A stretch of 63,885 nt of DNA from positions 34,180,393 to 34,244,277 of the forward strand of contig NC_068987.1 in the NCBI RefSeq assembly GCF_001194135.2, read 5' to 3'. The notes under the pieces are model-generated. The model saw nothing but the letters and a program-made list of their open reading frames with translations. It searched no databases and was not told where the DNA came from. A program made the translations under genes and the position numbers. Position 1 is the first letter of the stretch. Every line of letters starts with the position of its first letter. This document shows positions 15,763 to 62,235 of the stretch, in pieces. This DNA comes from Octopus bimaculoides. Its lineage: Eukaryota.

Positions 15763-16125
15763 NNNNNNNNNNNNNNNNNNNNNNNNNNNNNNNNNNNNNN
15801 NNNNNNNNNNNNNNNNNNNNNNNNNNNNNNNNNNNNNNNNNNNNNNNNNNNNNNNNNNNNNNNNNNNNNNNNNNNNNNNNNNNNNNNNNNNNNNNNNNNN
15901 NNNNNNNNNNNNNNNNNNNNNNNNNNNNNNNNNNNNNNNNNNNNNNNNNNNNNNNNNNNNNNNNNNNNNNNNNNNNNNNNNNNNNNNNNNNNNNNNNNNN
16001 NNNNNNNNNNNNNNNNNNNNGTTGTATTTCGGGGTGGTCATGTTGCCAGGTTAGCCAATAAAAACACACACACTATATCTTTGGTGTTAATTTGCTTCAC
16101 CTTTATTTTACATTAATCGTATTTC

Positions 16126-16170
16126 GGCAAGATTTCTTTCGTCACACTTCTTTGACCTCATCAGTGGTCC
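16126..16170 (-). ncRNA. Hammerhead motif, left arm of H2 (degenerate)
   Basis: Minus strand: GGACCA-CTGATGA-G-GTCAA-AGAAGT-GTGAC-GAAA-GAAA-TC-TTGCC. Confidence 0.55.
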
Positions 16171-16577
16171 TTTGCTTACTTCTTTCCTATTTGTGTGTCT
16201 TTCCTCACTAACAATCAGCCATTTTGTATTTTGTATTCTATTGTATGTGTCTTTATTTGCGCATGCGTATCCCCTATATGTGCCTATGTTTTGTAAGTGC
16301 GTGCGTGTGTATGGGCAGCGCCTGTATTAACTGTATCCCCTGTTTATACACGTTCATTTGATATGTTTTGATTTATTTGTTCATGTGTTTATGCCTAGTT
16401 ATTAATCCTTTTTTATAGTTTTTTTTTGTTTGTATACACACGCACACCCTTGCTAAACATAGACACGCATAGGGGGATACGCATGCGTAAATAAAGACAC
16501 ATACAATAGGAATACAAAATACAAAATGGCTGATTGTTAGTAAGGAAAGACATACAAATAGGAAAGAAGAAAGCAAA

Positions 16578-16622
16578 GGTCCACTGACGAGGTCACAGAA
16601 GTGTGACGAAAGAACTCTGGCC
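16578..16622 (+). ncRNA. Minimal type I hammerhead motif, right arm of H2 (core intact)
   Basis: GGTCCA-CTGACGA-G-GTCAC-AGAAGT-GTGAC-GAAA-GAAC-TC-TGGCC. Helix II is 5 bp, helix I is CCA/TGG plus GG/CC after a bulge; predicted cleavage after C16617. Confidence 0.7.
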
Positions 16623-16831
16623 GAAATACGATTAATGTAAAATTAAGGTGAAGCAAATTAATATTAAAGATATAGTGCGTATGATTTTATTGGCTAAACT
16701 GGCAACATGACCATACCCAAATACAACAATTTCTGTTTCAAAACACGATTTCACATCAAGAATCTTCCAAAACGAATATATAAACGTAATATTCATATAT
16801 ATATATATATATATATGCGTATTCATACCTT

Positions 16832-23612: not shown

Positions 23613-24490
23613 TTAGCTAACGGCATCTGGCTTAAAATCTGAAACAGAAAGGTTTATCATAGCAGCTCAATACCAATGCCTACGTACATGGAACTACCAG
23701 GCCAACATATTACGACTTGCACGACAGCTTCCCAACATGCCGTGTATGGCAACTACACAATGAGATTTTTGATCATGTTGTCTCCATGTGCAGTCTACAG
23801 AGTATCTGAACAGTCATGATAGAGCTGCACAATATATTCATTGGGTAATTTTCAAAAACCTGGACTTGCCCCATGATAAAAACTGGTTGGAACATAAACC
23901 ACCTCCAGTGCTTGTACATGATCACATTGCACTTTTCTGGAACTTAACCATTCAAACTGACAGAAATATAGATGCAAATAGGCCAGACATCGTATTGAAA
24001 GACATCAGACAAAAAGCATGCCTCCTCATTGATATGACTGTCCCAATCGATATTACCGTATTTGTCAAGACCTACAAAAAACTGAGCAAGTATAAAGATC
24101 TTGAAATAGAAATTAACAAGATGTGGAACCTGAAGACTAAAACGACACCTGTTCTCATAGGTGCCCTAGGAATGATAGCAAAAGGGGCTGATTGCTACCT
24201 AGCTCAGATACCAGGAAACCTCAAAATGGCAGAAATTCAAACGATAGTGCTCATCGGAACTGCTCATATCTTACGCAAAAAACTTTTGTATGTAATCTCA
24301 AATTTTAAAACAAACATAATTTTCTTATGGTTTCTTAAACATTCTTTAGAAGAACACTATGTACAGAACCAAATATATGGCACACTAGGCATAACACCAA
24401 CATGAACTTCTAACTTGTTGTCTCTTGAGGTCTCTGAGTGAGACTTGGAGCCAACTTGTACAAATGTAAAGCAAGTCAAATATAAAATAA
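23613..24490 (+). mobile_element. R4/Dong LINE 3' fragment (zinc knuckle plus REL endonuclease) inserted between (AAT)n tracts
   Basis: ORF 23788-24405: HDRAAQYIHW...IQTDRNIDANRPDIVL...LLIDMTVP...KLSKYKDLEIEINKMW...PVLIGALG...LIGTAHILRK, canonical REL motifs. Confidence 0.92.
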
Positions 24491-42665: not shown

Positions 42666-44100
42666 ATAAACACACACACACACACACGCACACAATTAGG
42701 CACAACGAGAAGTAGAAAAATGGAGGACTACGACTAGGAGAAGTAGAAAAAATGGAGTACTACTACTAGGAGAAGTGGAAAAATTGAAGAAGTAAAACGA
42801 TATGTACGGTCATTGAAAAGATAGAAGAAGAGAAAATAGATAATGGAATATCAGGTGAGACAGGGAAGTTAATATTAGAGAATTGCAATATAATACACTT
42901 AAAAACATGGAGAAGTCAGAGAATAAATAGAAGAAATCAACGTGAACAAGTAATACATTGTATGATGGAATAATTTCGATATCTTAGAGTAATAATGAAA
43001 ACAGATAAATATGAAAAAGGAAAAAAAGAAAAATGAATTTAGTATTCAGTATTACGACTATTATATACTCATCGGAATGCTAAACGTCCTAGCAAAACAA
43101 GGTAGAAGAAAACGAACATAAAAATAATGCTATAAGAATATACCAAGGATGAAATGATGTGTACATAATATATTTCCCTAGATTGCTGGTTGGTAGGGGC
43201 CTTACGCAGCTAAAAGAATTATACTCTATTTAAGGGAAGTATTACACCTTGCATAATATCGAATAACGAACATCTCCTTTAAAGACTCCAAAATAAGAAT
43301 TTAGCGATACAAGAAAATATGGAACCTAATTCATGAAATACTTATTAAGGAAGACATATGTAGAGGCTACAAACAAAAGTCGCGAACGAAAACATCCCCA
43401 CCACATCATTCTGCAGCTTTATTTTCACAATAGTTTCTAACAGTGTTATGAAATACTAATAGAAACTATTAATATATACATGCATCAGAAAATATTAGGT
43501 AGAAAAGAAAGTCTCTATATTGTGGTCCAAACTTAAACAGACACGAAATAAATTCAAATCTATTAGGGATACTTTATTAAAAAAAAAATATTCTATGAAA
43601 TAGATACCTTCAAACCGAAGTAGAAGATTTTATTATCTTAACAGAAATGGAAACGTTATTCATTTGTTAAATTCATGGAAGTAGCACTAACTGAAGTCGG
43701 AAATAAATATGGTATTGTCTGTTCACTCGGAACGGTTTGAAGAGGAACGCGCTGATAAACGGAATTGCTTAGAACGATCAAATCCGGAAAACAGAGAAAA
43801 TTGCAATCCTCAGCACCACAAACACATGCGCGGGCACATACACACACGCACGCACATACACGCATACACAGAGAAGCAAGCACATTCACACACACACACA
43901 CACACACATACGCGCACGCACACATACACACATATATAAACGGTGCACTCCAGACTTTTTGAGATTTTTCAAGACAGATGTATGTTTTATTTCAGAGAAG
44001 TCTAAAGCTCTAATCGCCTTCAAAGTAGGAGCCTCTGACTTCAACGCGTTAATGCAGCTGTCATAGCTCCCAGTCACTTCGTGAAGATCCCCCCCCAAAA

Positions 44101-44260
44101 CATTATTGACATTATTTACATTTAACGGATATTTGTCCTCATCTTGTTTGTTGTTAACACAACGTCTCAACTGATATAGCCTCCATCCTTCATCAGGTGT
44201 GTTGCTGAAATTTTCGAAGCTGGGTTCTCATTCCAAAGATATTTTTCGATGCTGTTGTTG

Positions 44261-44331
<71 letters not shown>

Positions 44332-44520
44332 GTTGCTGGTGTTGTTGTTGTTGTTGTTGTTGTTGGTGGTGGTGGTGTTATTCAGGTCATTGCCTGGAAT
44401 CGAACTCGGAATCTTGGGGTTAGTAGCGTTCTTAATCACTACGCCATATGCCCGTTGGCGTATTGGTTAAGAGTGTGAGCTACTAACCCCAAGATTCCGA
44501 GTTCGATTCCAGGCAGTGAG

Positions 44521-44558
<38 letters not shown>

Positions 44559-44742
44559 CAATATCGAAAAATACCTTAGGAATGAGAACCCAGTATCGAG
44601 ATTTCTCCAAGAGACCTGATGAAGGCTGGAGGGTATATCTGCTCAAACGTTGTGTTAACAACAAACAAGATGAGGACAAATATCCATCAAATGTAAATAA
44701 TGCAAATAATGTATATAATTCCTCATCTCTTAAATATAGAAC
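44101..44742. mobile_element. Head-to-head fold-back of family H1: tRNA-like head + (AAT)n + hammerhead + 3' stem-loop
   Basis: Arms 44101-44446 and 44456-44712 are reverse complements. A-box TGGCGTATTGG at 44456, B-box GTTCGATTCC at 44501; HHR motifs at 44156-44200 (-) and 44611-44656 (+). Confidence 0.9.
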
Positions 44743-45000: not shown

Positions 45001-45861
45001 AGAGCTCTGGCCTTTTTCAATGAAATCACTTTCTGAACTCCTTATATACCTTTACTAATTAATCGTTGGTCACCCTCTGGACAGAACGATCCCAGAGAAT
45101 GTATATGATAATCTTGTTGGAAAAAAGAAGGTCACCTAGAGCTTCCCGTTGGATTTGCTTTTCATGGCATTCCTGTATCAGAAGTAAGACAAGATACTTC
45201 CGATAGGTACTTGATAAATGGATCATGACTGTAGATGTTGCTTTTAGAACAGGTCAGCAGAGACTTAGTTATTTTGGAATGGTAGTAATGAGCTGAACCA
45301 CCCACATGCTGTCACCAAAGCGTCCTTTCTTCTGTTCTTCCAAGAGCTCACTGGAAGTAAACTTTGCACACATTTTGTGAATCTTCAGTTCTTCACGAAT
45401 ATTTCTGTGTAATAATGTCTGTCTATTTCTATGTAACATTAATAGACAGACCGAGCCTCAATAGAAAAGGCAAATGGAACAATAACACTGACCACTACCA
45501 CACTATGCAGGATGACGACTAAAGACAGAATGGAAGAAAATAATGAGACGCAGATATAAAACAGATACAAACATCAAAATAACTAAACGCATAAATACAA
45601 AAAGGACACATTTGCGTACATTTCAGACGGAGATGAAAATGGAGATAAATAAGTAAATAAATAAACAAGTAATAAATGAATGAATAACTGACTAAATATA
45701 AAAAGGGCACGGACACAAATAGTATAGTAAGCAAACTTATATACATACACACACACACACACATACGCACGCAGACAACCCCCCCCCCAAATATATATAT
45801 ATATATATATATACATACACATATGTATGTATATATGTGGGTATATATATTTATATATATG

Positions 45862-45897
<36 letters not shown>

Positions 45898-45901
45898 TTT
45901 A

Positions 45902-46415
45902 AAATGCAGAGATGCCTATAATAGGACATCTACTCGCTAGAAATAGCAGCAAAAGACTATATACCACAAAAATTAGGGATAATTTCGAAAGGAAATGAAA
46001 AATAAAAACTTTTACCAATCTATATTCTGTACCATGGTTTCATTTATTAATAATGATAACATTCTTTTTGGATAATTTTCTGAAAGAATTTCGGCATTTT
46101 TGTATTTGCTGCCGATTAGGTAAACCGCAAATACGCGGTATATTTTGAAAAATTAGACATAGGAACACGAACCATGCTGCTTATTGACTCGTGCTTCATA
46201 TGTTGTCTGGTCATTTCTGCTGATGATTGTCCGACCTTGTAAGATATATAAATTTTATCTTACTAAAATTGACTTGAAACCATGGTACGGAATATAGATT
46301 GGTAAAAGTTTTTATTTTTCATTTCCTTTCGAAATTATCCCTAATTTTTATGGTATATAGTATTTTGCTGCTATTTCTAGCGAGTAGATGTCCTATTATA
46401 GGCATCTCTGCATTT
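45902..46415. mobile_element. Inverted-repeat element (140-bp arms 45902-46041 and 46276-46415) with a hammerhead at the right-arm junction (family H3)
   Basis: Arms are near-perfect reverse complements, and the left arm ends exactly at the complement of GAAA. Confidence 0.9.
46215..46292 (+). ncRNA. Minimal type I hammerhead ribozyme motif
   Basis: TTCTG-CTGATGA-TTGTC...GTAAGATA/TATCTTAC hairpin...GACTT-GAAA-CCATGG-TA-CGGAA. Helix I is 5 bp, helix III is the palindrome ACCATGGT, predicted cleavage after A46287; the base of helix II is mismatched. Confidence 0.75.
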
Positions 46416-46629
46416 NNNNNNNNNNNNNNNNNNNNNNNNNNNNNNNNNNNNNNNNNNNNNNNNNNNNNNNNNNNNNNNNNNNNNNNNNNNNNNNNNNNNN
46501 NNNNNNNNNNNNNNNNNNNNNNNNNNNNNNNNNNNNNNNNNNNNNNNNNNNNNNNNNNNNNNNNNNNNNNNNNNNNNNNNNNNNNNNNNNNNNNNNNNNN
46601 NNNNNNNNNNNNNNNNNNNNNNNNNNNNA

Positions 46630-46752
46630 AAAACCTCTTCGGTAAACTCATTTATAATCATAAATATATAGGGATTGACAATAACCTGCTTTTCCAACAT
46701 ACTGAGTATGTTGGAGAAGCAGGTTACTGTCAATCCCTATATATTTATGATT
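46630..46752. repeat. Near-perfect hairpin (46656-46752) formed by fold-back of a repeat homologous to 52680-52770
   Basis: TAATCATAAATATATAGGGATTGACA...CCAACATAC-TGA-GTATGTTGG...TGTCAATCCCTATATATTTATGATTA. Confidence 0.85.
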
Positions 46753-46780
46753 ATATATATATATATGTACGTATATAATG

Positions 46781-46849
<69 letters not shown>

Positions 46850-47320
46850 TACTGTTCCCTACATGTATGTGGGGGTGTACATGTGTATATACGATTGGCA
46901 TCTATATAGTTTCAGACTCAAAAATGTACTCCCGGCACTTTGATCGTCGTGGACCTAATAGTGCATAACACTAGCTAATAGTCTATATTTCTAAACAGAA
47001 ATTATAACTATTTACTTTCTCTCATTATCAATCTTCATTGTATTATAATATTTACAATAATTCTTTCCGTATGAAATGCTAAATTTTTATAATCCTCAGT
47101 TGTCACATCTGCTGTTAGGTTCACTATTAATACCAATAGAGTTTTACTGGAACATATATTTGTAAAACACGGAATAAATATAGACATAATGAATTGGTAA
47201 TGGATGGAGGTGCAATTAAATTCACACGAAATATAATAACCGCCAAGAAAAGAAGATATAGATTAAAAATGCGATACCTTCTAAAATGATGTATTTACAG
47301 TGATATTAAATACCACTTCA

Positions 47321-47705
47321 GTGGAGGCGCAATGGCTCAGTGGTTACGGCAGTGGACTCGCGGTCAGAGGATTGCGGTTTCGATTCCCAGACCGGGCGTT
47401 GTGAGTGTTTATTGAGCGAAAACACCGAAAGCTCCACGAGGCTCCGGCTGGGGATAGTGGCGAACCCTGCTGCACTTTTTCACCACAGCTTTCTCTTACT
47501 CTTACTTCCTGTTTCTGTTGTGCCTGTAAATCAGACGGTCAGCTTTGTCACACTGTGCCAGGCTGAATATCCCCGAGAACTACGTTATGGGTAAACGTGT
47601 ATGTGGAGTGCTCAGCCACTGCCACGTTAATTTCACGAGCAGGCTGTTCCGTTGATCGGATCAACTGGAACCCTCGATGTCGTAACCGACGGAGTACCAA
47701 CAAAA
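47321..47705 (+). mobile_element. tRNA(Arg)-like SINE (resembles octopus OR-type SINEs)
   Basis: Head GGCGCAATGGCTCAGTGGTT...GACTCGCGGTCAGAGGATTGCGGTTTCGATTCC parallels tRNA-Arg; it lacks a proper acceptor stem and has a 300-bp unrelated body. Confidence 0.78.
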
Positions 47706-47954
47706 TACCAGTTCGGTTTATTTGTACCCTACCATCTGCTTTGAAATGATTACTTTTTGTAGCAAGTTTGATATCATATTTTCAATAAACTAACAATTAT
47801 CAACTAAGTACATAGATTAATATCAAGGACACTAGCTCTAATTTGAACTTGTCTATATATCTCCTTTCGTGCTATGTTGCATTTAGTATTTTTTTAATTT
47901 CTATTTTGGTAGCAACTTATATTATTAATAAATTTCATTATTACATCACATGGT

Positions 47955-48150
47955 AAAGCGGGGAGTTGGCAGAATCGTTAGCACTTTGGGCACAGGGATT
48001 AGCACAATTTCGTTCGTCTTTGCCTTCTAAGTTCAAATTCCGTCATAGTCTACATTGCCTTTCCTCCTTCGGATTTGATAAAATAAGGATCCGTTGAGTA
48101 CTGAAGTCGACCTAATTTCATGCCTTGTGCCTATAGTAGACAGGGCTATT
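47955..48150 (+). mobile_element. SINE-F2, diverged
   Basis: Colinear with 27413-27633. Confidence 0.7.
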
Positions 48151-48908
48151 ACTTTACATGGATACGATGGCGAGCTGTCAGAATGATTATCGGGCCGAGA
48201 GAAATGCTCAGCAAAGTTGAAATTCCAGTGAGGTAAAATTGACGTTTCGTCCTCTCGGTTGGATAAAATAATGCTAGCTGTGCACAGGGGGATATGTAAT
48301 CGAATTTCACCTGTTCCCAAAATTGCAGGTATTTTACCAAAATTTGAAACCATTTTTACATTGAATGGCACGTACATGAACCTGTGATCGAAGTGAAAAT
48401 GCATTTTCATAATTCCTCCCAGATATATACTTGAAATTTTAAATTGATATATCCATTTTATAAAGTGTTCGTTTTCATATACTTCTTCCTATTATTTGCA
48501 GTGATATACTTCATTAACAATTAGAGGGTATTATTGCTGTTATTAAGCTTTACATAGAATCAATGCAAAGAGCAGCAAACGCGCGTGTCACATATCTGTT
48601 CTATGAAGTAAATTCATTTCTTTTTCTCAGCTGTCAAGTATACGTTGCAAAGGTATCACGTGTGCTATACTTCCTCCTCTGCGCATGTCATGATAAGAAA
48701 AACAACATGCAAAAGTCATTTTGAATGATTTTGGATTTTGATTTTGAATCAAAGTCGATTACTACAACAATATTTGAAGTCTAACGTGTAAGAGGATGTC
48801 ATAATGTCATAATTCAAGTTCAACTGAGAGCAATACCGTGCTGAAATACAAAGACTGAACACATCCATACACACACGCACACACACACATATATACACAC
48901 ACACACAT

Positions 48909-49070
48909 CTGAGTTCAAATTCCGCCGAGGTCGACTGTGCCTTTCATCCTTTCGGGGTCGATTAAATAACTACCAGTTACGCACTGGGGCCGATATAATC
49001 GACTTAATCCGTTTGTCTGTCCTTGTTTGTCCCCTATGTGTGTAGCCCCTTGTGGGTAGTAACGAAATAA
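48909..49070 (+). mobile_element. SINE-F2 subfamily, 5'-truncated
   Basis: CTGAGTTCAAATTCCGCCGAGGTCGAC...CCTTTCATCCTTTCGGGGTCGATT; tail shared with 63350-63420. Confidence 0.8.
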
Positions 49071-49582
49071 CACACACGAGCATGCACGCACGCTAACTTA
49101 CCTGTTTAAAATCTTTGAGATTGGTATGAATGTAGTCTCTCTGAACCGTTACAACATCTCCCACATTGGCGAGAACGAGGCAGAAAGATATCCTCAAATG
49201 GGAAAACTCTGCTCAAACTTGTAAGAAACTGGATTCCGTGGGCTGTGGATTCAGTTGAAGCCACACACAGTGTAATGTGGCAGTACATACAAATACGCAC
49301 CCACTTATACACACATATACACATACAATCATACAAGAGTACATATACACACATACGTACACATGTATATATGTATGTATGTATATATATATATATATAT
49401 ATNNNNNNNNNNNNNNNNNNNNNNNNNNNNNNNNNNNNNNNNNNNNNNNNNNNNNNNNNNNNNNNNNNNNNNNNNNNNNNNNNNNNNNNNNNNNNNNNNN
49501 NNNNNNNNNNNNNNNNNNNNNNNNNNNNNNNNNNNNNNNNNNNNNNNNNNNNNNNNNNNNNNNNNNNNNNNNNNNNNNNNNN

Positions 49583-49625
<43 letters not shown>

Positions 49626-51978
49626 CGTGCACACACGCACGCACACACACACACACAGATATATATATACACACAAACCAAACATTATCTTGTATACATG
49701 CATGCTGATCCATTAATATAAGGCTGTCTTTTACAAATGTTTATCTACTTAAACCATCCTATATTTGAATGGTTGATAGCAGTGATTTCACTTAAAACCA
49801 TCATAGAAGAATGCAGTAGTATGTTTGTTTGTATAAACTGATAGCTTTTGGCTATTACGGGCTTCACTTTTGCAAAATATAACCTGTCGCTTAAATATAA
49901 GTCCTGAAAGTGAAAGCAAACATAAATATTTACAATTCCTGTACTGTCATTGCTATTCACAATACGTTTACCTACCAAATAGATTTTTGTTCGCTTATAC
50001 AATTTTATTTTTTCTTCATTTGTGTGTGTGTGTGTGTGTGTTTTTTGTGTGTTTACTTTTGTAATGAGTTCTGCTAGGAGCAATGATTGTCAATAGATTC
50101 GTTCTATATATTATGATTAAGTCTGACATGGCATACCCTAGTAAGAGTAGTTCATGTTTACTTACGAAGAGGAGTTTGTGAATTCGAAGCTCTCATTTAT
50201 TTGCTCTAATATAAACAGGAGGAAAAAGTTAGGTGCAACATATTAAAAAAAATAATAATAAAAAACAAACACTCATGAGAAAAATATATTCTATATTATA
50301 GAAATACTATTGAATGCTAGAAACCTTACATCAACGAAATATAAGTTGCAGAACATGATCTGGTACCTTATGTTCTATGTTCAAATGTCATTGAAATCAA
50401 GTATGAATTTCACAATTCAGGACCTGGTAAATGAAGCACTAATATAACAAAAAGGTCTGCATTTTTGTTATTGTAACAGTTTATCTCTTTTTACTGTCTC
50501 TTTCTTTATCACCTCTCTTTCTAACACACTCTGTTACTCTCTTTGATTATCTTTCTGGGAATTGCTCAATATAGCAGTATGATATGTGTGGGGAGGATCA
50601 TTTACAGTACCATTTTCTATAAAAATTTGATTACGATACTCTCATCGTTCACACTTCAAATCTAGTCAACAGAACAGAAAGGAAGAGAATGTGCCCAGTT
50701 AGTGCTGAAGTGCAGACGATATTTAATTAATAGTACGCAGTGTATGAAATGTTGCACGTATCGGAACAAAGTCTGCATTAGCATCAAATTACATAGATAC
50801 TACAAGAAAGAAAATGATTAGTCGAAGATAAAATTCATTTTATTTTATTTACGACTAGTCTTTTTTCTTCATCCATTCTTATTTTCGGGTTCCAAGATGG
50901 TGGTTTTGAATTGTAAGAACGCTGGAAGATAGGAGTTTTGTATATAGTTTTCAATTCCTTACATCCTCATATGAAATTTCGCCAAGGTACCCAGAGCTTT
51001 GCTAATTGGTTCAACACAGTCGAACCTATCCAACGAAGTATTAGCGTGGACAAATAAGCATACAGTAAGCTTATTATATTATACTGGCCCCGATCTTGTA
51101 TTATTATATTATACTGGCCACGATATTGCAAATATTAAGGATGATTTAATTGGAACGTACGATTTAGTTATGCATAAAGGTAAGCACATTTTGATCTATT
51201 AAAACAAAACTGCTTTCCAAAATTCCACTATTGCCCTTTGTTTCCAAGCAATGAGACCAGGAAAATAATTGAAACACTAGCAGAAGAGACATCACTCTGA
51301 AAACTTTCACTACGAATTCAGTTTGCATAAAGAACATATAATGAAAGACTAATTGCATTTTAGTTCCAAAATGAATACATATATTTTTGTATTGGGCATT
51401 AACAAATTACCGTCCGTTATCGCATCGTGTGTAAACATGGAGTATTGGGAAATGATATTGATAGTGCTAATGACTAATCGATCCCCATTTTCAACTTTCC
51501 ACAGCAGTAGCTTCAACGTTAACAAGCTAACGATATTTTAAGTATCTTATTCAGAGGAAAGAGGAGGGCCCATGACATTCTATTTCACCTTGAGTCTGTG
51601 TATAGATCGTAACGAAACTGGGAATTCCTCGCTAATATGTAGTACAGTTTCAACTGTCAAAGGTACCTGTAGTGTAAATACAGTTGTTTAAAGGTATGAT
51701 GGATTTAATCAGTCAGGTAAGAAACGAAAGACCACCTCAGTGAAATTTCAATGACAAATTTTACTTCAAAGGCCTTAGTTAAACTGGGGCTAGAGTACAA
51801 GACACTTGCTTAAGGTATCGCATTATCTGCAAAACTAAATACAAATTATCTGAGAACTGATAACTCAGCTACTAATTTCTCACCTTTCATTCGATCAATC
51901 TTATGACGCTTTCACATTACATCCACTTTGAGGAGGATATATAGATTGATACACATACACACACACGCACGCACGCGG

Positions 51979-52030
<52 letters not shown>

Positions 52031-52032
52031 GT

Positions 52033-52585
52033 TTTTAGTTTTCGTTCCGTTTGAAATTACTCTTCTCCCCGGTTTGGATTTTGACTGCCGTTTTGAGCAT
52101 GTACGGTGCCCTGTTAGGGTCACCACTTTTGCGTATAGATATGTACACTAATTTTTATGAAAAATATGTTGTTTATTGACTCTATTACGCATGTTGGCCA
52201 CTGGTAGAATATTTCTCAGAATTTTCTACCATAAATATGTTCATAGTAAAAGTTTAGAAGAACGTTGGTACGTAACTTTTATTTGCTGCCGATTGTAGCT
52301 GCGCTTGCGCGGTGGATTTGAAGAATTATATTGTATATAGATGGAACATGTATGTCTTCAGTGTTCCACAAATACACTTTAATTATTGCGCCCATGCTGA
52401 TGAGACACGAATGGCAACTTATTTTATTTGTTCATTGATGTCGAAACTCGAGTACATGTGGTAACTATTGAAATGATTTTATTTTTCGTTCCTATTGAAA
52501 TTACTCCTATTCTGGGTTTTAACTGCCCTTTTCAAGATGGCCCCTGTTAGTGTCATTTCTTTTGTGTATAGAAATCTACACTAAT
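52033..52585 (+). mobile_element. Partial tandem of a retrozyme/pLTR-like unit (family H3): direct repeats 52033-52152 and 52478-52585 around an HHR
   Basis: Shared TTTTCGTTCC..TTGAAATTACTC...CTGCC.TTTT...CCCTGTTAG.GTCA...TTTTG.GTATAGA.AT.TACACTAAT; period about 433-444 nt. Confidence 0.75.
52393..52458 (+). ncRNA. Intact minimal type I hammerhead ribozyme motif
   Basis: CATG-CTGATGA-GACA...TGTC-GAAA-CTCGAG-TA-CATG. All core nucleotides present, canonical G10.1-C11.1 pair, helix III is the palindrome ACTCGAGT; predicted cleavage after A52454. Confidence 0.85.
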
Positions 52586-52604
52586 ATACATACATATATA
52601 TATA

Positions 52605-52946
52605 TATACAAGAATAAGGGCAGATAATCGTCAATTAATAATAGAATTAATAACTAACAATTCTGCCAAGTAGTTCAGTATGAAAAAAACCTTTATCGGT
52701 AAGACTATTTATCATTATAAATATACAGGGATTAGCAATTGAGTTGCTTCTCCAACATACTGAAAATTTAGAAGTAGCAGTCAAAGAACTACTGATTCCA
52801 AACTACAAATTTTCTCTAAAGTGGATGGCGATATTTATGGCACACATAGAACAAAAAACCGGAGGGAAAAGCGTAAACAAGCCAAGCTTTTAGTTAATTG
52901 GATACGAATCGTTTCATGGTTAAGTGAATAGAAATTTCACTATTCC
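52605..52946 (-). mobile_element. Repeat related to H3, truncated by a gap, ending in the 3' half of a hammerhead
   Basis: Minus strand GAATAG-TGAAATTT-CTATTC hairpin, then GAAA-CGATTCG-TA-TCCA; downstream TTCTTTGACTGCTACTTCTA resembles H3 TTTTGCTGCTATTTCTA. Confidence 0.5.
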
Positions 52947-53644: not shown

Positions 53645-54533
53645 TCGGGTCATCCCATAAATAATGTATTTTCTGTATACTTCTATTATTTTTGAAAATG
53701 AAAATAAGCACAGTTGTTTTAATTTCAAATATACTTTCCTTCATTTTCCTCAATGCTTTTCCATCTATCTAGTAGACTTGCAAGGCCCCTCTTCCAAAAT
53801 TCACTTGTACGTGACGAAAATTACGCCTCCAGTACTGTTCTGACTTCGTCTACAGAATTTATATTTCCCCGTCCAAATGTTTTTGAATACTGCGGAATAA
53901 ATAATAATCAGATGGAGCAATGTTCGGTGCATATGGTAGGTAGGGCATCGTTTGCCATTGAAACTGCTCCAGCCTTTGGAATGTCATCCTGGCTGTATGT
54001 GGCCAAGCATTATTCTGATGGTAGAACCACTTTCGTCTTGCAACCAAAGATTATGGATTTTCTTCCAGTGTAGGTGCGATGAATGGTTAAATGACCAAAT
54101 CGAAGCTTCGCTGCTAGCTCATCAACAGTTACAATGGGATTTCTTCCATCACGGTTTGCAACGCGTCTTTTCCGAGGTCTAGAGATCTTCCAGGACGTGG
54201 ATCGTGTTCTAGTCTATAGTTTCCGGCTCAAAATTTCTGGACCCACCGTTGACACTGGCTTACTCTTATTGTCCGATCCCCATATACTGCATTAATATAC
54301 CTCGCACTTTCCGTTGCGTTGATGCCTCTATTCAACTCATAAAGCAAAATATGTCGAATATGCTCCTTTGTCATTTCCATTATAGCTTGCTTTGCATAAA
54401 TAACTGTTTAAATCGAACTGCACACTACAGAGCTTGCACTGAGTATAAGTAAAAGGTAAAATTATAGCAAATTGATGCAGGTAGTTTATCCAGTCCCGCT
54501 CCGAATTTTAGTTCTTACAATTCAATAAACCGC

Positions 54534-58150: not shown

Positions 58151-59044
58151 CAGCACACGATGGGTAAGATGTCGTAAGTTAATTACGTAATGTAATTACG
58201 CTAAAGGAAAATAACAAAGGCATCTCATTTTAACAGATATATTTACCAAAATTACATATAAACATCTTGAAATACTACAGAGTAAATTCATTGAATGAAA
58301 ACACCATTGGCATCAACTGAGGCTTCCAGATGACTTCGTAATCTCCTGCAACTCTATTGGACGATCTCCTTGTTTACGTTTGTGAATGCTGCGGTAACCC
58401 TTGCCTTCGGTTCATCTTTAGTGATACAAAGAGTTTAGTTGGTCTCTCGCTCCACACCTAATAATCAAGGAGGTTGCAGCCTGGTGCGTTACATGGTCGG
58501 ATGTTATGGGTGATGTGATTGCAGAAATTGCCTGACCGCCATGACTGGGTTCTCTTGCTTGTGTGACATGGTGCAGAGTCCTGTTGCGAGACATAGGGTC
58601 TTCCAGCAGCCACCCTCTTCACCCAGGGCAGCACTATCTCCTCAAGGCACTTGATATAAGCCTCCGTATTGAGACTGAGGCTGTGTGGGAAGATGAATGT
58701 AGGCATAACATCGCAATCACTAGTGATAACTCCAAACAATATGATATTGACTGGATGTTTGATTCTTATCACTCTCGGTATATATCCCCATATTTCACTG
58801 TTTTCAGATTCACACCCAAGCACCCTGAAATGTTCGCATTGGAGCTTTTGGCGCGAATACCAAGCAGTACAGCATGTCGTTTCCAAATTTATGGCAGAGT
58901 GAATTGGATCATGGCATTGTTATTTTCTCATAAGTGACGCCAAACTGACTCTACTATACTGTGTAGTCGACAAAAAAAGAATCAAGCAAGTACACGCGCA
59001 AGATTAAAAATATAAATTGGCAATAGTTTACCCATCGCACCCTG
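58151..59044 (-). mobile_element. Tc1/mariner-superfamily (maT/DD37D-like) transposon, deleted
   Basis: ORF 58458-58886 KHPVNIILFGVITSDCDVMPTFIF...YVSQQDSAPCHTS...NAPGCNLLDY; imperfect TIRs CAGCACACGATGGGTAA / TTACCCATCGCACCTG. Confidence 0.85.
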
Positions 59045-60394: not shown

Positions 60395-62235
60395 CCTTTA
60401 ATGGCAGTAGTTTAACTTGGCTTGATGTACCTTTGCATGTCGTTTAAGTTCTCTTGCTGAATCACACTCCCTTCCACATCCCTGACAGATATGATTGGTA
60501 TGGTGTGTAGCATCAGTACCAGCGGCCTGGTAGTCAATCATCGGTCTCACTTTATGACTACGAAGATGTCTCTTGAGTTCAGCTTTACTGAGGCAAAGGC
60601 AAGGTTTTGCACAGAAACTGCATGTCTGCGCCATACGAATACCCTTACCATCTGGAAGTGCAACAGCGATGCCCTTCCTGATATCTTTCCCCACTTTTTC
60701 ATGCTCAACTCAAGTTTCTCAAAAGTGACCCACCCTCATGCACAATCCTTCTCCACATGCTACGGTCAATAGCTATGCTCTCCCCTGTGTGAGGAGAGAT
60801 GCTATCATCTCTCAAGGAAGCCTTCAGCAATGTATACAATCTTCATAGCTCTTTCTTTTTGTTTTTTTTGGTTTATGTGGAGGTCGCTCTCCTTTAGCTA
60901 ACTCTCCATAGAGGAGTTGTTTTGGCATCCTTGAAACCTTCATCCTAACCGGATGACCACTCCACCTGAGCTTTTACTTCAACACAGGAGATTTTATAGT
61001 TACACACCGAGTGCTTTCCAATGTCTCAAGATCACTAACGCAGTTCTCCCTCCGTTTGAGGTATATCTGATATAAACGTTCCAGTTGTTTAAGCTGGTAT
61101 CTTTATATGAACCTGGTCTCGCACGCATAAAGAAGAGGCGAGATCACAAACGCCTTATAGACCTTTATCTTTGTCTTCCTGTATATGTCTCGCCCATTCA
61201 AGAGGCGCCTTTCTAGCATTCCTAATTCTGTATAGAATTTCAATATCCAAATTGCTATATCAATTAACAGTGCTTCATAAGTAGACAAACTAATCAACTG
61301 CATCAAGTCGTTTACCATACACATAGATATTTGGTTCACTATACTGCTTACCAGGGGCAGGATGTAACATGCAAACAGTTTTCTTGAGACTGATTGCCAA
61401 TCCTAACGCAGTGCAATCATCAGAGCATGCATTCAAAATGTGTTGCATATCAATCTCTCGGTGCGCTACTAGATCACAATCATCTGCATACAAAAGTTCT
61501 CTTATGAAAGAGGTAAATACCCTTGTTTTTGCAGCAACGTGCCGGAGTTTCGATAATGGATGTAAACACCAGATCTGCAATGTTGAACGCAATAGAGAAA
61601 ACCATCGCAATATATATGGCAAATAGGGTCGGTGCCAGAATATACCCCTGTTTCACTCCACTTTGTAATGAGATGGGCTCCGACATTTTACCTCTAGCAT
61701 TAACCCTACCCTTCATGTCTTCATGAAAAGACCTAACCAAAGCAAGGAACCTTGTATCATTGGAATCCGCCGCCGCCCGCATCTCATCGGCCTTCTTACA
61801 CTACCACGTATCCCTCATCTGAGAGAGCCTCCGCCTCACACGTGATTTCACATTCTTGAGTTCCCTGTGTAACTCCGGTGGATTTGCTGACAAATAGTGT
61901 GGCAAAGGATGTCTACTGTCAGCGAATAAATCATCTGTATATTATCATTTTTTTAAAACAATCTTGATGCTTTCTTTGTGTCAATCTCAGAACGTTCCTG
62001 CCTATATCAAAAACTGGCTTTTAAAGGGCCAGCCAATCTTCTCAAATATCTGCAACAATCATTTCCTCTCCTAAAGTTCTATCTACACTTGTACAACAAA
62101 CACGAGCAAAATTCAGTCGGTTACACAGAGTAATACCTGCAGCCCGGATTTTACGTTTTGGGATTAATTTCACTTTTGCACATACCAAACGGTGGTCAAT
62201 CCAACACTCAACCCAACGAAGAACACGAACACATT
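60395..62235 (-). mobile_element. RTE (BovB-like) LINE relic: APE end, RT, two C-terminal C2H2 fingers
   Basis: ECWIDHRLVCAK (APE); SGVKQGYILAPTLF and RELLYADDCDL (RT); TKIKVYKAFVISPLLYACET; CSFC..LSKAELKRHLRSH and CQGCGRECDSARELKRHAKVH. Confidence 0.9.

What the first reader, a model, noticed from the sequence alone, without database searches (positions are those of the whole stretch)
46103..52503. Diverged hammerhead-retroelement family (H3) with exact spacing conservation and compensatory helix changes
Seen: the HHR loci at 46.2 kb and 52.4 kb share an identical 15-mer, TATTTGCTGCCGATT (46103-46117 and 52280-52294), each exactly 117 nt before CTGATGA. Both follow it with CGCGGT..ATTT(T)GAA. 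Both have a downstream box TTTTATTTTTC.TT(T)CCT.T.GAAATTA..CCTA, with GAAATTA 44 and 43 nt after the predicted cleavage site. The helices differ in sequence but keep pairing: helix I TTCTG/CGGAA vs CATG/CATG, helix III ACCATGGT vs ACTCGAGT (both perfect 8-nt palindromes), and both cleave at GUA. Known: minimal type I HHRs with palindromic helix III occur in Penelope-like element pseudo-LTRs and non-LTR retrozymes and are thought to act as dimers. Inference: covariation plus fixed-distance boxes indicate selection on ribozyme function in a non-coding retroelement family. The boxes could be cis-signals (promoter or RT recognition) that may be undescribed.
Basis: partly seen in the sequence, partly recalled or inferred. 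Interest (0 to 1): 0.85.

Follow-up and report, generated by a model that had tools for sequence, protein, structure and literature searches.

The report
Hammerhead-ribozyme retroelement remnants in octopus
Two old, strongly diverged copies of a short mobile element that carries a self-cutting hammerhead RNA motif, inserted into TA-repeats in the tangled tandem/inverted way typical of Penelope-like retroelements; the motif is real but this is an ordinary kind of repeat in invertebrate genomes.

Summary
A hammerhead descriptor with a palindromic helix III hits exactly these two places in the window and none of 300 random windows. Copy B (52393-52458) is a full-length but sub-threshold match to Rfam Hammerhead_1 (20 bits, gathering score 34), and its predicted dimer fold is the double hammerhead. 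Copy A (46215-46292) has two U.U mismatches at the base of helix II and no Rfam match.

The two copies differ by six pair-preserving double changes, two per helix. The "exact 117-nt spacing" is not a constraint: ungapped identity across it is 24.5%, which is random, and inner boxes are offset by 3 nt.

The boxes are the best-kept patches of a homologous repeat of about 430-440 nt. B is a partial tandem with a 444-nt period. A has a 141-nt inverted 5'-truncated copy next to it, running up to the gap. Both abut (TA)n. No RT or endonuclease gene lies within 46.6-54.6 kb.

This matches published Penelope-like-element hammerheads and animal non-LTR retrozymes. The genome is octopus-like. It is a new member of a known kind, of low interest. 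Family-wide covariation could not be tested because no cephalopod sequence was reachable.

The parts
45740..45901 (.). (CA)n / C-run / (TA)n microsatellite that abuts the outer end of the inverted copy at locus A
   Evidence: Read directly and listed as repeat families D2, D3 and D5.
45902..46042 (-). Inverted, 5'-truncated partial copy at locus A. On the minus strand it carries T-GAAA, the helix III palindrome CCATGG, the GTA site, the helix I 3' strand CAGAA and the P segment.
   Evidence: Inverted repeat I6: 141 nt, 98% complementary to 46275-46415. The three mismatches are at 46289, 46350 and 46362.
46043..46214 (+). Q segment of copy A, 5'-truncated. Contains the 15-mer at 46103-46117, CGCGGT at 46134-46139 and ATTTTGAA at 46142.
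   Evidence: Weak homology to B between the 15-mer and the ribozyme (z 2.8).
46215..46292 (+). Hammerhead A. Helix I 5' strand 46215-46219; core CTGATGA 46220-46226; long helix II 46227-46275; GAAA 46276-46279; palindrome ACCATGGT 46279-46286; predicted cut after A46287; helix I 3' strand 46288-46292.
   Evidence: Helix II base is U.U/U.U. No Rfam hammerhead match. The hammerhead fold is not the predicted optimum: -35.6 against -42.8 kcal/mol for the dimer.
46288..46415 (+). P segment of copy A (post-cleavage part, with the box TTTTATTTTTC...GAAATTA), cut off by the assembly gap
   Evidence: Alignment A1 of the four P copies. The nhmmer profile finds exactly four copies in the window.
46416..46628 (.). 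Assembly gap. Probably hides the end of P, a (TA)n run and a spacer.
   Evidence: Collinearity with locus B. The inverted copy ends in TTAAATGAA followed by (TA)n.
46629..46758 (+). R segment at locus A, containing a 109-nt palindrome at 46650-46758. Whether it belongs to the element is uncertain.
   Evidence: 79% identical to 52685-52780. The self-inverted match is 93.6%.
51950..52030 (.). (CA)n(TA)n microsatellite that abuts the truncated upstream P copy at locus B
52029..52152 (+). Upstream P copy at locus B. It is 5'-truncated, lacking about the first 30 nt after the cleavage site, and has no ribozyme. It runs straight on into Q.
   Evidence: Direct repeat D10 with 444-nt spacing. BLAST 52473-52585 against 52029-52152 gives 73%. 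79% over the aligned body.
52153..52392 (+). Q segment of copy B. Contains the 15-mer at 52280-52294, CGCGGT at 52308-52313 and ATTTGAA at 52316.
52393..52458 (+). Hammerhead B. Helix I CATG 52393-52396; core 52397-52403; helix II 52404-52442; GAAA 52443-52446; palindrome ACTCGAGT 52446-52453; predicted cut after A52454; helix I 3' strand CATG 52455-52458.
   Evidence: Rfam RF00163, 20 bits, E 0.0071, model positions 1-45 of 45. The predicted dimer optimum is the double hammerhead, -39.7 against 2 x -14.4 kcal/mol. Pair table.
52455..52585 (+). Downstream P copy at locus B, ending at a (TA)n-like run at 52586-52612
52685..52780 (+). R segment at locus B, with a shorter hairpin. Whether it belongs to the element is uncertain.

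Best explanation
Loci A and B are two fossil insertions of one old, fast-diverging family of hammerhead-bearing retroelements. The family was mobilised by Penelope-like-element (PLE) machinery. Most likely it is a short non-coding unit of about 430-440 nt, that is, an animal "non-LTR retrozyme" or pLTR-derived non-autonomous element.

Shown:

- The unit is collinear in both copies: Q (15-mer, CGCGGT, ATTTGAA), then a type I hammerhead with a palindromic helix III, then P (about 130 nt).
- P ends at (TA)n.
- B is more than one unit long: P-truncated, Q, hammerhead, P, with a 444-nt period.
- A is a 5'-truncated copy with an inverted 5'-truncated copy joined to its 5' end.
- There is no RT or endonuclease gene nearby.

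Inferred from the published model for these families:

1. A source array is transcribed.
2. Two neighbouring ribozymes pair through the palindromic helix III into a double hammerhead and cut after GUA.
3. The unit-length RNA is joined into a circle by a tRNA ligase.
4. A PLE reverse transcriptase and GIY-YIG endonuclease supplied in trans copy it, for more than one round, into a nicked (TA)n target.
5. This yields 5'-truncated, partly tandem or inverted copies.

The conserved boxes are parts of that unit. Some may matter for the RNA, but these two copies cannot show it.

Each locus holds only one complete ribozyme, so neither can form the dimer in cis. Both are probably inert remnants.
For: The motif is real: exactly 2 descriptor hits in the window and 0 in 300 random windows.

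B matches Rfam Hammerhead_1 over the full model and folds as a double hammerhead.

There are six pair-preserving double changes between A and B, two in each helix. The inverted copy carries CAGAA, which pairs perfectly with TTCTG.

Homology extends beyond the boxes:
- Four P copies are found in the window.
- nhmmer aligns A to B collinearly at E 0.0015.

Architecture:
- 444-nt direct repeat at B.
- 141-nt inverted repeat at 98% at A.
- (TA)n at the element ends.
- A gap next to the inverted repeat.

No RT or GIY-YIG in 46.6-54.6 kb.

The unit has 34% GC.

Literature:
- PLE hammerheads are dimer-type, palindromic, extremely variable with compensatory changes, and are often found as single or opposite-strand pairs 100-700 bp apart (PMC4209133).
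- PLE insertions are 5'-truncated, in partial tandem, often with an inverted truncated copy. They prefer (TA)n and break short-read assemblies (PMC8557442).
- Animal retrozymes have units of 150-450 bp with low GC (PMC7229834) and derive from PLE pLTRs (bioRxiv 10.64898/2026.07.22.740005).
Against: - No PLE gene is present in the window, so the link to PLE machinery rests on architecture and on the type of ribozyme.
- Only two full and two partial copies could be examined.
- Each locus has a single complete ribozyme, not a tandem array.
- The 433-nt B unit is not more structured than shuffles (z -1.2), unlike the highly self-paired retrozyme circles described in the literature.
- A's helix II base is non-canonical, and A's arms are 98% identical. 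The odd helix II was therefore probably already in its source copy.
- B's two P copies are only 79% identical, which a single-event tandem does not predict unless the insertion is old or two different templates were used.
Confidence: 0.7

Rival explanations
1. The two loci are heavily 5'-truncated 3' ends (pseudo-LTR parts) of a longer, autonomous Penelope-like element, not a short non-autonomous unit. On this reading the P-to-Q junction at 52152/52153 marks a template jump of the reverse transcriptase, not the true circular junction of a 440-nt unit.
For: [quoted passage not shown] A and B are truncated at different points in Q, 60 versus 127 nt upstream of the 15-mer. Upstream of the 15-mer the two copies are not detectably similar (z -0.2).
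Against: At B, P runs directly into Q with a 444-nt period and no coding sequence. That is what more-than-unit copying of a short unit gives. No RT or GIY-YIG remnant lies in 46.6-54.6 kb.
Confidence: 0.2
2. One reading: the 15-mer, the CGCGGT box and the downstream box are selected, previously undescribed cis-signals (promoter or RT-recognition sites) held at fixed distances from an active ribozyme.
For: A 15/15 identical run in copies that are otherwise about 55-63% identical has P of about 0.02-0.07 under uniform decay. TTTTATTTTTC and GAAATTA are kept in all P copies that reach them. The 15-mer can pair with the CGCGGU region in both copies.
Against: The distances are not fixed: inner boxes shift by 3 nt and the 117-nt equality comes from cancelling indels. 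The 15-mer/box pairing is only marginally better than with shuffled partners (15 of 300 and 27 of 300 shuffles reach it) and shows no covariation. With two copies, patchy conservation is expected anyway.
Confidence: 0.07
3. Chance motifs or an assembly artefact. On this reading the inverted repeat next to the gap and the similar boxes come from mis-assembly of microsatellite-rich sequence, and the hammerhead resemblance is accidental.
For: Both loci lie next to microsatellites and gaps. The right arm of the inverted repeat ends exactly at the gap. Rfam gives no match at gathering score.
Against: 0 of 300 random windows give even one descriptor hit, against 2 observed. The arms of the inverted repeat differ at 3 of 141 positions, so they are not the same reads placed twice. 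Locus B is ungapped across the whole unit. B matches the full Rfam model.
Confidence: 0.03

Closest known systems
Hammerhead ribozymes of Penelope-like elements (Cervera & De la Pena 2014, PMC4209133)
   Same: Type I topology, short helix I (4-5 bp), long helix II and a palindromic helix III implying action as a dimer. Extreme sequence variability within a genome, with compensatory changes. Mostly isolated motifs, or pairs on opposite strands 100-700 bp apart. Located in the terminal repeat part of the element.
   Different: Helix III here is a full 8-nt palindrome rather than absent or 1-2 bp. Helix II carries a 39-49-nt insert. [quoted passage not shown] A lacks the G10.1-C11.1 pair. No PLE open reading frame is nearby.
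Animal non-LTR retrozymes (Cervera & de la Pena 2020, PMC7229834; Li et al. 2026 preprint, 10.64898/2026.07.22.740005)
   Same: Non-coding unit of a few hundred nt (444-nt period at B), low GC (34%), type I hammerhead that needs a second copy, and a proposed origin from PLE pLTRs. A U.U mismatch at the base of helix II has a precedent in the axolotl HHR_Amex2.
   Different: There is no multi-copy tandem array here; each locus has one complete ribozyme. No loop 1-loop 2 tertiary contacts were recognised. The unit RNA is not predicted to be unusually self-paired. Expression as circular RNA is unknown.
PLE insertion architecture (Craig et al. 2021, PMC8557442)
   Same: 5'-truncation, partial tandem forming a pseudo-LTR, an inverted 5'-truncated copy at the 5' end, a (TA)n target preference, and assembly problems at such sites.
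   Different: That description comes from coding elements of 3-4 kb, and the (TA)n preference was stated for the Naiad clade, which lacks canonical hammerheads. Here the unit is about 0.44 kb and non-coding.
Rfam RF00163 Hammerhead_1, and the classic double hammerheads of newt satellite 2 and avocado sunblotch viroid
   Same: Core CUGAUGA...GAAA, an NUH site (GUA), and cleavage expected only when two copies share an extended helix III.
   Different: B scores 20 bits against a gathering score of 34. A does not match at all.

Membership tests
Hammerhead ribozyme, type I (Rfam RF00163) | Conserved core C3-U4-G5-A6-N7-G8-A9 and G12-A13-A14, with A15.1-U16.1 and an H17 cleavage nucleotide | tested here: met
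   Both copies have CTGATGA, GAAA, A...T closing helix III, and the GTA site.
Hammerhead ribozyme, type I (Rfam RF00163) | Open helix I formed by the 5' and 3' flanks | tested here: met
   A has 5 pairs including one G.U. B has 4 pairs. The inverted copy has CAGAA, fully complementary to TTCTG.
Hammerhead ribozyme, type I (Rfam RF00163) | Helix II closed next to the core by a standard pair (usually G10.1-C11.1): copy B | tested here: met
   B has G-C, A-U, C-G, A-U at positions 10.1-10.4.
Hammerhead ribozyme, type I (Rfam RF00163) | Helix II closed next to the core by a standard pair: copy A | tested here: not met
   A has U.U and U.U, then G-C, U-A, C-G. In A's predicted optimum the core is sequestered.
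Hammerhead ribozyme, type I (Rfam RF00163) | Score at or above Rfam's gathering threshold (34 bits) | tested here: not met
   No match at gathering score in the window. B scores 20 bits, E 0.0071, on a 96-nt stretch. A has no match.
Hammerhead ribozyme, type I (Rfam RF00163) | Site-specific self-cleavage | not testable with these tools
   Needs transcription of monomer and dimer constructs.
Hammerhead of a Penelope-like element (pLTR) | Weak or palindromic helix III that implies action as a dimer | tested here: met
   ACCATGGT and ACTCGAGT. The cofold of B gives the double hammerhead as the optimum.
Hammerhead of a Penelope-like element (pLTR) | Insertion architecture: 5'-truncated copies in partial tandem and/or with an inverted truncated copy | tested here: met
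   B has a direct repeat with a 444-nt period. A has a 141-nt inverted copy.
Hammerhead of a Penelope-like element (pLTR) | Microsatellite, often (TA)n, at the insertion borders | tested here: met
   (TA)n at 45790-45901, 52010-52030 and 52586-52612.
Hammerhead of a Penelope-like element (pLTR) | Element encodes a PLE reverse transcriptase and GIY-YIG endonuclease between the repeats | tested here: not met
   Pfam on all stop-free stretches of at least 45 aa in 46.6-54.6 kb found only a mariner HTH_48. The only RT in the window is a LINE-type fragment at 61.1-61.8 kb.
Hammerhead of a Penelope-like element (pLTR) | Extra unpaired nucleotide between A9 and 10.1 | tested here: not met
   B pairs from the first nucleotide after A9. 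A has U.U/U.U instead.
Animal non-LTR retrozyme | Short non-coding unit (about 150-450 bp) of low GC | tested here: met
   444-nt period, 433-nt reconstructed unit, 34% GC, no open reading frame over 50 aa.
Animal non-LTR retrozyme | Tandem copies, each with a hammerhead, so that a unit can be excised | tested here: not met
   Each locus has only one complete ribozyme. The upstream unit of B is truncated before its ribozyme.
Animal non-LTR retrozyme | Highly self-paired unit-length RNA | tested here: not met
   Circular fold of the B unit gives -89.9 kcal/mol, z -1.2 against 100 dinucleotide shuffles. This is an old copy, so the test is weak.
Animal non-LTR retrozyme | Expressed as circular RNA joined at the cleavage site | not testable with these tools
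   No transcriptome data could be reached.

The most novel reading that the evidence does not exclude
H3 is a cephalopod lineage of hammerhead retrozymes that has not been described. Its 15-mer/CGCGGU hairpin and post-cleavage box would be true cis-signals, recognised by a PLE reverse transcriptase or acting as an internal promoter. Its A subfamily would work with a non-canonical U.U/U.U base of helix II.
Probability: 0.12. Interest if true: 0.45.

Novelty: new member of a known kind. Interest (0 to 1): 0.2.

Why it matters
The finding adds an octopus example to the known association of dimer-type hammerhead ribozymes with Penelope-like retroelements and their non-autonomous derivatives. The full-text search found no paper describing hammerheads in octopus.

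It also shows that such copies are invisible to Rfam at curated thresholds. Their tandem or inverted insertion into (TA)n coincides with assembly gaps, which is useful for annotating cephalopod genomes.

It does not open a new question. Variability with compensatory changes, palindromic helix III and this insertion architecture are all published properties of the class.

Tried and rejected
1. Rfam on the whole window at gathering score, and on 45.8-53 kb at E up to 10, found no hammerhead. Only a 96-nt query recovered B.

2. A scan of the metagenome collection with TATTTGCTGCCGATT-N(8-24)-CGCGGT gave 5 hits. All are chance matches in prokaryote-like contigs without a hammerhead.

3. Exact look-ups of window ORFs, tried in order to fetch an ungapped copy of the region, found nothing on record.

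4. 197 kb of ENA and Logan loci were fetched through relatives of a window transposon ORF. They contain no H3 copy and no descriptor hit.

5. A protein-level search with the short ORFs of the element was considered and dropped. The transposon search returned octopus proteins only from UniRef, with almost no Logan hits, so octopus sequencing reads are evidently not indexed.

6. A covariance model built from only two sequences was not made. The descriptor and nhmmer had already shown there are no further copies in the window.

7. Rod-like folding of the unit RNA was tested and not supported.

8. The 15-mer/CGCGGU hairpin is only marginally better than shuffles.

9. A and B as the two terminal repeats of one 6-kb element was rejected. 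They are far too diverged (about 63% in P, helices unalignable) and nothing coding lies between them.

Full report
**The observation**

Reading the two places and string searches confirm every literal statement.
- TATTTGCTGCCGATT occurs only at 46103 and 52280.
- CTGATGA follows 117 nt later in both, at 46220 and 52397.
- CGCGGT is at 46134 and 52308.
- ATTT(T)GAA is at 46142 and 52316.
- TTTTATTTTTC is at 46310 and 52477 and nowhere else in the window.
- GAAATTA lies 44 and 43 nt after the predicted cuts at A46287 and A52454.

The helices are as described, and both sites are GUA.

I ran a hammerhead descriptor on both strands. It requires CTGANGA, a spacer of 8-80 nt, GAAA, A + 6-nt palindrome + T, a non-G nucleotide, and at least 4 pairs in helix I. 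It hits exactly these two places and none of 300 random windows with the same first-order composition. The motif is therefore not a chance find.

**The gaps**

The gap at 46416-46628 cuts copy A about 128 nt after the cleavage site. After the gap comes a segment I call R (46629-46758). It is 79% identical to 52685-52780, which in locus B lies 100 nt beyond the end of the same post-cleavage segment with no gap in between. The order and orientation across the gap in A are thus supported by collinearity with B. The gap's true length is unknown.

The gap at 49403-49582 lies inside a (TA)n run between the loci and touches neither copy. Nothing here is coding, so reading frame is irrelevant.

**What the ribozymes look like**

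Copy B (52393-52458) is a regular type I hammerhead.
- Helix I has 4 pairs.
- Helix II starts with G-C, A-U, C-G, A-U and carries a long insert.
- Helix III is the palindrome ACUCGAGU.
- Given only a 96-nt stretch, Rfam aligns it to Hammerhead_1 over the whole model at 20 bits, E 0.0071, below the gathering score of 34.
- The predicted optimum for two copies is exactly the double hammerhead: intermolecular helix III and helix I, at -39.7 kcal/mol against 2 x -14.4 for the monomers.

Copy A (46215-46292) has the core, a 5-pair helix I and the palindrome ACCAUGGU.
- The two pairs of helix II next to the core are U.U and U.U.
- Rfam does not match it.
- In the predicted optimum, GAUGAUU of the core is tied up with GGUCAUU upstream. 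The double-hammerhead fold costs 7 kcal/mol more than the optimum.
- One U.U at this position is known from an axolotl retrozyme hammerhead (PMC7229834). Two in a row is unusual, so A's activity is doubtful.

Between A and B there are six pair-preserving double changes:
- helix I positions 3 and 4;
- helix II positions 3 and 4;
- helix III positions 3 and 4.

The inverted partial copy at A has CAGAA where A has CGGAA. Both pair with UUCUG. This is what one expects if the fold was under selection in the sources of both copies. With two sequences it is an indication, not a test.

**Spacing and boxes**

The equal 117 nt does not reflect a constraint.
- In the ungapped register, the 102 nt between the 15-mer and CTGATGA are 24.5% identical, against 27% expected at random.
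- The best alignment needs at least six indels.
- CGCGGT sits at +31 in A and +28 in B.
- The ribozymes differ by 10 nt in length.

The boxes are the best-preserved patches of a longer homology.
- An nhmmer profile of the post-cleavage segment (P, about 130 nt) finds four copies in the window.
- A aligns to B collinearly over about 260 nt at E 0.0015.
- P is about 63% identical between the A and B copies.

A 15-nt perfect run in copies this diverged has a probability of about 0.02-0.07 under uniform decay. That is mildly notable. The 15-mer can pair with the CGCGGU region in both copies, but this is barely better than with shuffled partners and shows no covariation.

At B, a third copy of the downstream box lies at 52027-52063.
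- The segment 52029-52152 is a 5'-truncated P copy that runs straight into Q, the ribozyme and a second P.
- This gives a 444-nt period.
- B is therefore a more-than-unit-length, partly tandem copy.

At A, 45902-46042 is the reverse complement of 46275-46415.
- The match is 141 nt with 3 mismatches.
- It starts at the T before GAAA and runs to the gap.
- It is an inverted 5'-truncated copy joined to the 5' end of a 5'-truncated direct copy.

In the inverted copy of A and the downstream copy of B, P ends at (TA)n. The truncated upstream P of B begins at (CA)n(TA)n.

No reverse transcriptase or GIY-YIG endonuclease is encoded in 46.6-54.6 kb. Pfam on every stop-free stretch of at least 45 aa found only a mariner HTH domain near 54.3 kb.

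**Comparison with what is known**

Cervera and De la Pena (PMC4209133) described hammerheads in the terminal repeats of Penelope-like elements. Their traits are:
- a short helix I and a long helix II;
- a palindromic helix III that implies dimers;
- occurrence mostly as isolated motifs, or as pairs on opposite strands 100-700 bp apart.

Craig et al. (PMC8557442) describe PLE insertions as 5'-truncated and in partial tandem, often with an inverted truncated copy at the 5' end. They note a preference for (TA)n and trouble for shotgun assemblies.

Animal non-LTR retrozymes are non-coding tandem units of 150-450 bp with low GC and type I hammerheads (PMC7229834). They have been linked to PLE pLTRs (bioRxiv 10.64898/2026.07.22.740005).

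The two loci fit this picture in ribozyme type, architecture, target and lack of coding capacity.

They do not meet several defining features.
- There is no PLE gene.
- There is no array with a ribozyme in every unit.
- There is no unusually self-paired unit RNA (z -1.2).
- The Rfam threshold is not reached.

I therefore file them as remnants that work like, and most likely derive from, a PLE-mobilised hammerhead element. They are not demonstrated members of a named family.

**Mechanism**

The model below is inferred from the published work, not shown here.
1. A source array is transcribed.
2. Neighbouring ribozymes form a double hammerhead through the palindromic helix III and cut after GUA.
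3. The unit RNA is circularised by a tRNA ligase.
4. A PLE enzyme supplied in trans copies it, for more than one round, into a nicked (TA)n.

This explains the P-Q-ribozyme-P order at B and the truncations. Each locus now has a single complete ribozyme, so neither can form the dimer in cis. Both are probably inert.

**Organism and limits**

A transposon ORF in the window (23773-24402) has its best matches in Octopus bimaculoides, at 81% and 73% identity.

No cephalopod genome could be reached.
- The metagenome scan gave only chance hits.
- Exact look-ups of window ORFs found nothing.
- 197 kb of fetched loci hold no copy.

**Open points**

1. R follows both copies on the same strand, yet is much less diverged than they are. 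It may be part of the element or a second repeat that also targets (TA)n.
2. B's two P copies are only 79% identical while its ribozyme is intact.
3. A's arms are 98% identical while its helix II base is non-canonical. The oddity was therefore probably already in A's source copy.

**Verdict**

This is a real hammerhead-bearing repeat and a new member of a known kind. The spacing argument fails, and the boxes are unproven as signals. Interest is low.

Noticed in passing
window 16021-16727: A foldback of about 700 bp starts right at the gap 15763-16020 (arms 16021-16238 and 16510-16727, 91% complementary, plus inner arms). Each arm carries a minimal-hammerhead-like motif. On the + strand, about 16578-16625, it reads GGTCCA CTGACGA G GTCAC agaagt GTGAC GAAA GAAC TC|TGGCC. 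On the - strand the motif has CTGATGA at 16164. Three of its traits are published for PLE minimal hammerheads: an extra nucleotide after A9, a G10.1-C11.1 pair and a 5-bp helix II. Rfam does not match it.
   Followed up: partly
window 46629-46758 and 52685-52780: A segment R lies downstream of both hammerhead copies on the same strand. It is 79% identical between the loci, far more than the hammerhead element itself. It contains a hairpin: a 109-nt palindrome at A and a return arm of about 30 nt at B. No other copy is in the window. It may be part of the element or a separate repeat that also inserts in (TA)n.
   Followed up: partly
window 44100-44712: An inverted repeat (112-nt arms at 88%, plus 81-nt arms) around long (ATT)n/(AAT)n runs. 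CTGATGA occurs on both arms (44196 on the - strand, 44616 on the + strand) but has no GAAA partner, so this is not a hammerhead.
   Followed up: no
window 53660-54510 (-) and 58461-58919 (-): Mariner-type transposase fossils. There is a Mos1 HTH_48 domain at about 54231-54407 (52 bits) with mariner-like C-terminal pieces at 53.8-54.1 kb. A second ORF at 58.5-58.9 kb looked mariner-like by eye but has no Pfam match.
   Followed up: partly
window 61103-61800 (-): A LINE-type reverse transcriptase fragment with YADD and GVKQGYILAPTLF motifs (RVT_1, 21.9 bits, below the cutoff). It is not of the Penelope type, judging by its motifs.
   Followed up: partly
window 23773-24402 (+): A 210-aa stop-free stretch of a transposon-like protein with no Pfam domain. 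Its best matches are two uncharacterised Octopus bimaculoides proteins (81% and 73% identity) and many ENA invertebrate contigs at about 50%. This is the basis for calling the window octopus-like.
   Followed up: partly
window 48026-48069 and 48908-48951: A repeat of about 44 nt at 80% identity, TCTRAGTTCAAATTCCG...GCCTTTC, resembling the T-arm region of a tRNA-derived SINE (family D8).
   Followed up: no
whole window: There are fifteen assembly gaps in 64 kb. Most of those I looked at are flanked by (TA)n or (CA)n runs, and two adjoin inverted repeats that carry hammerhead-like motifs, at 16021 and 46415.
   Followed up: no
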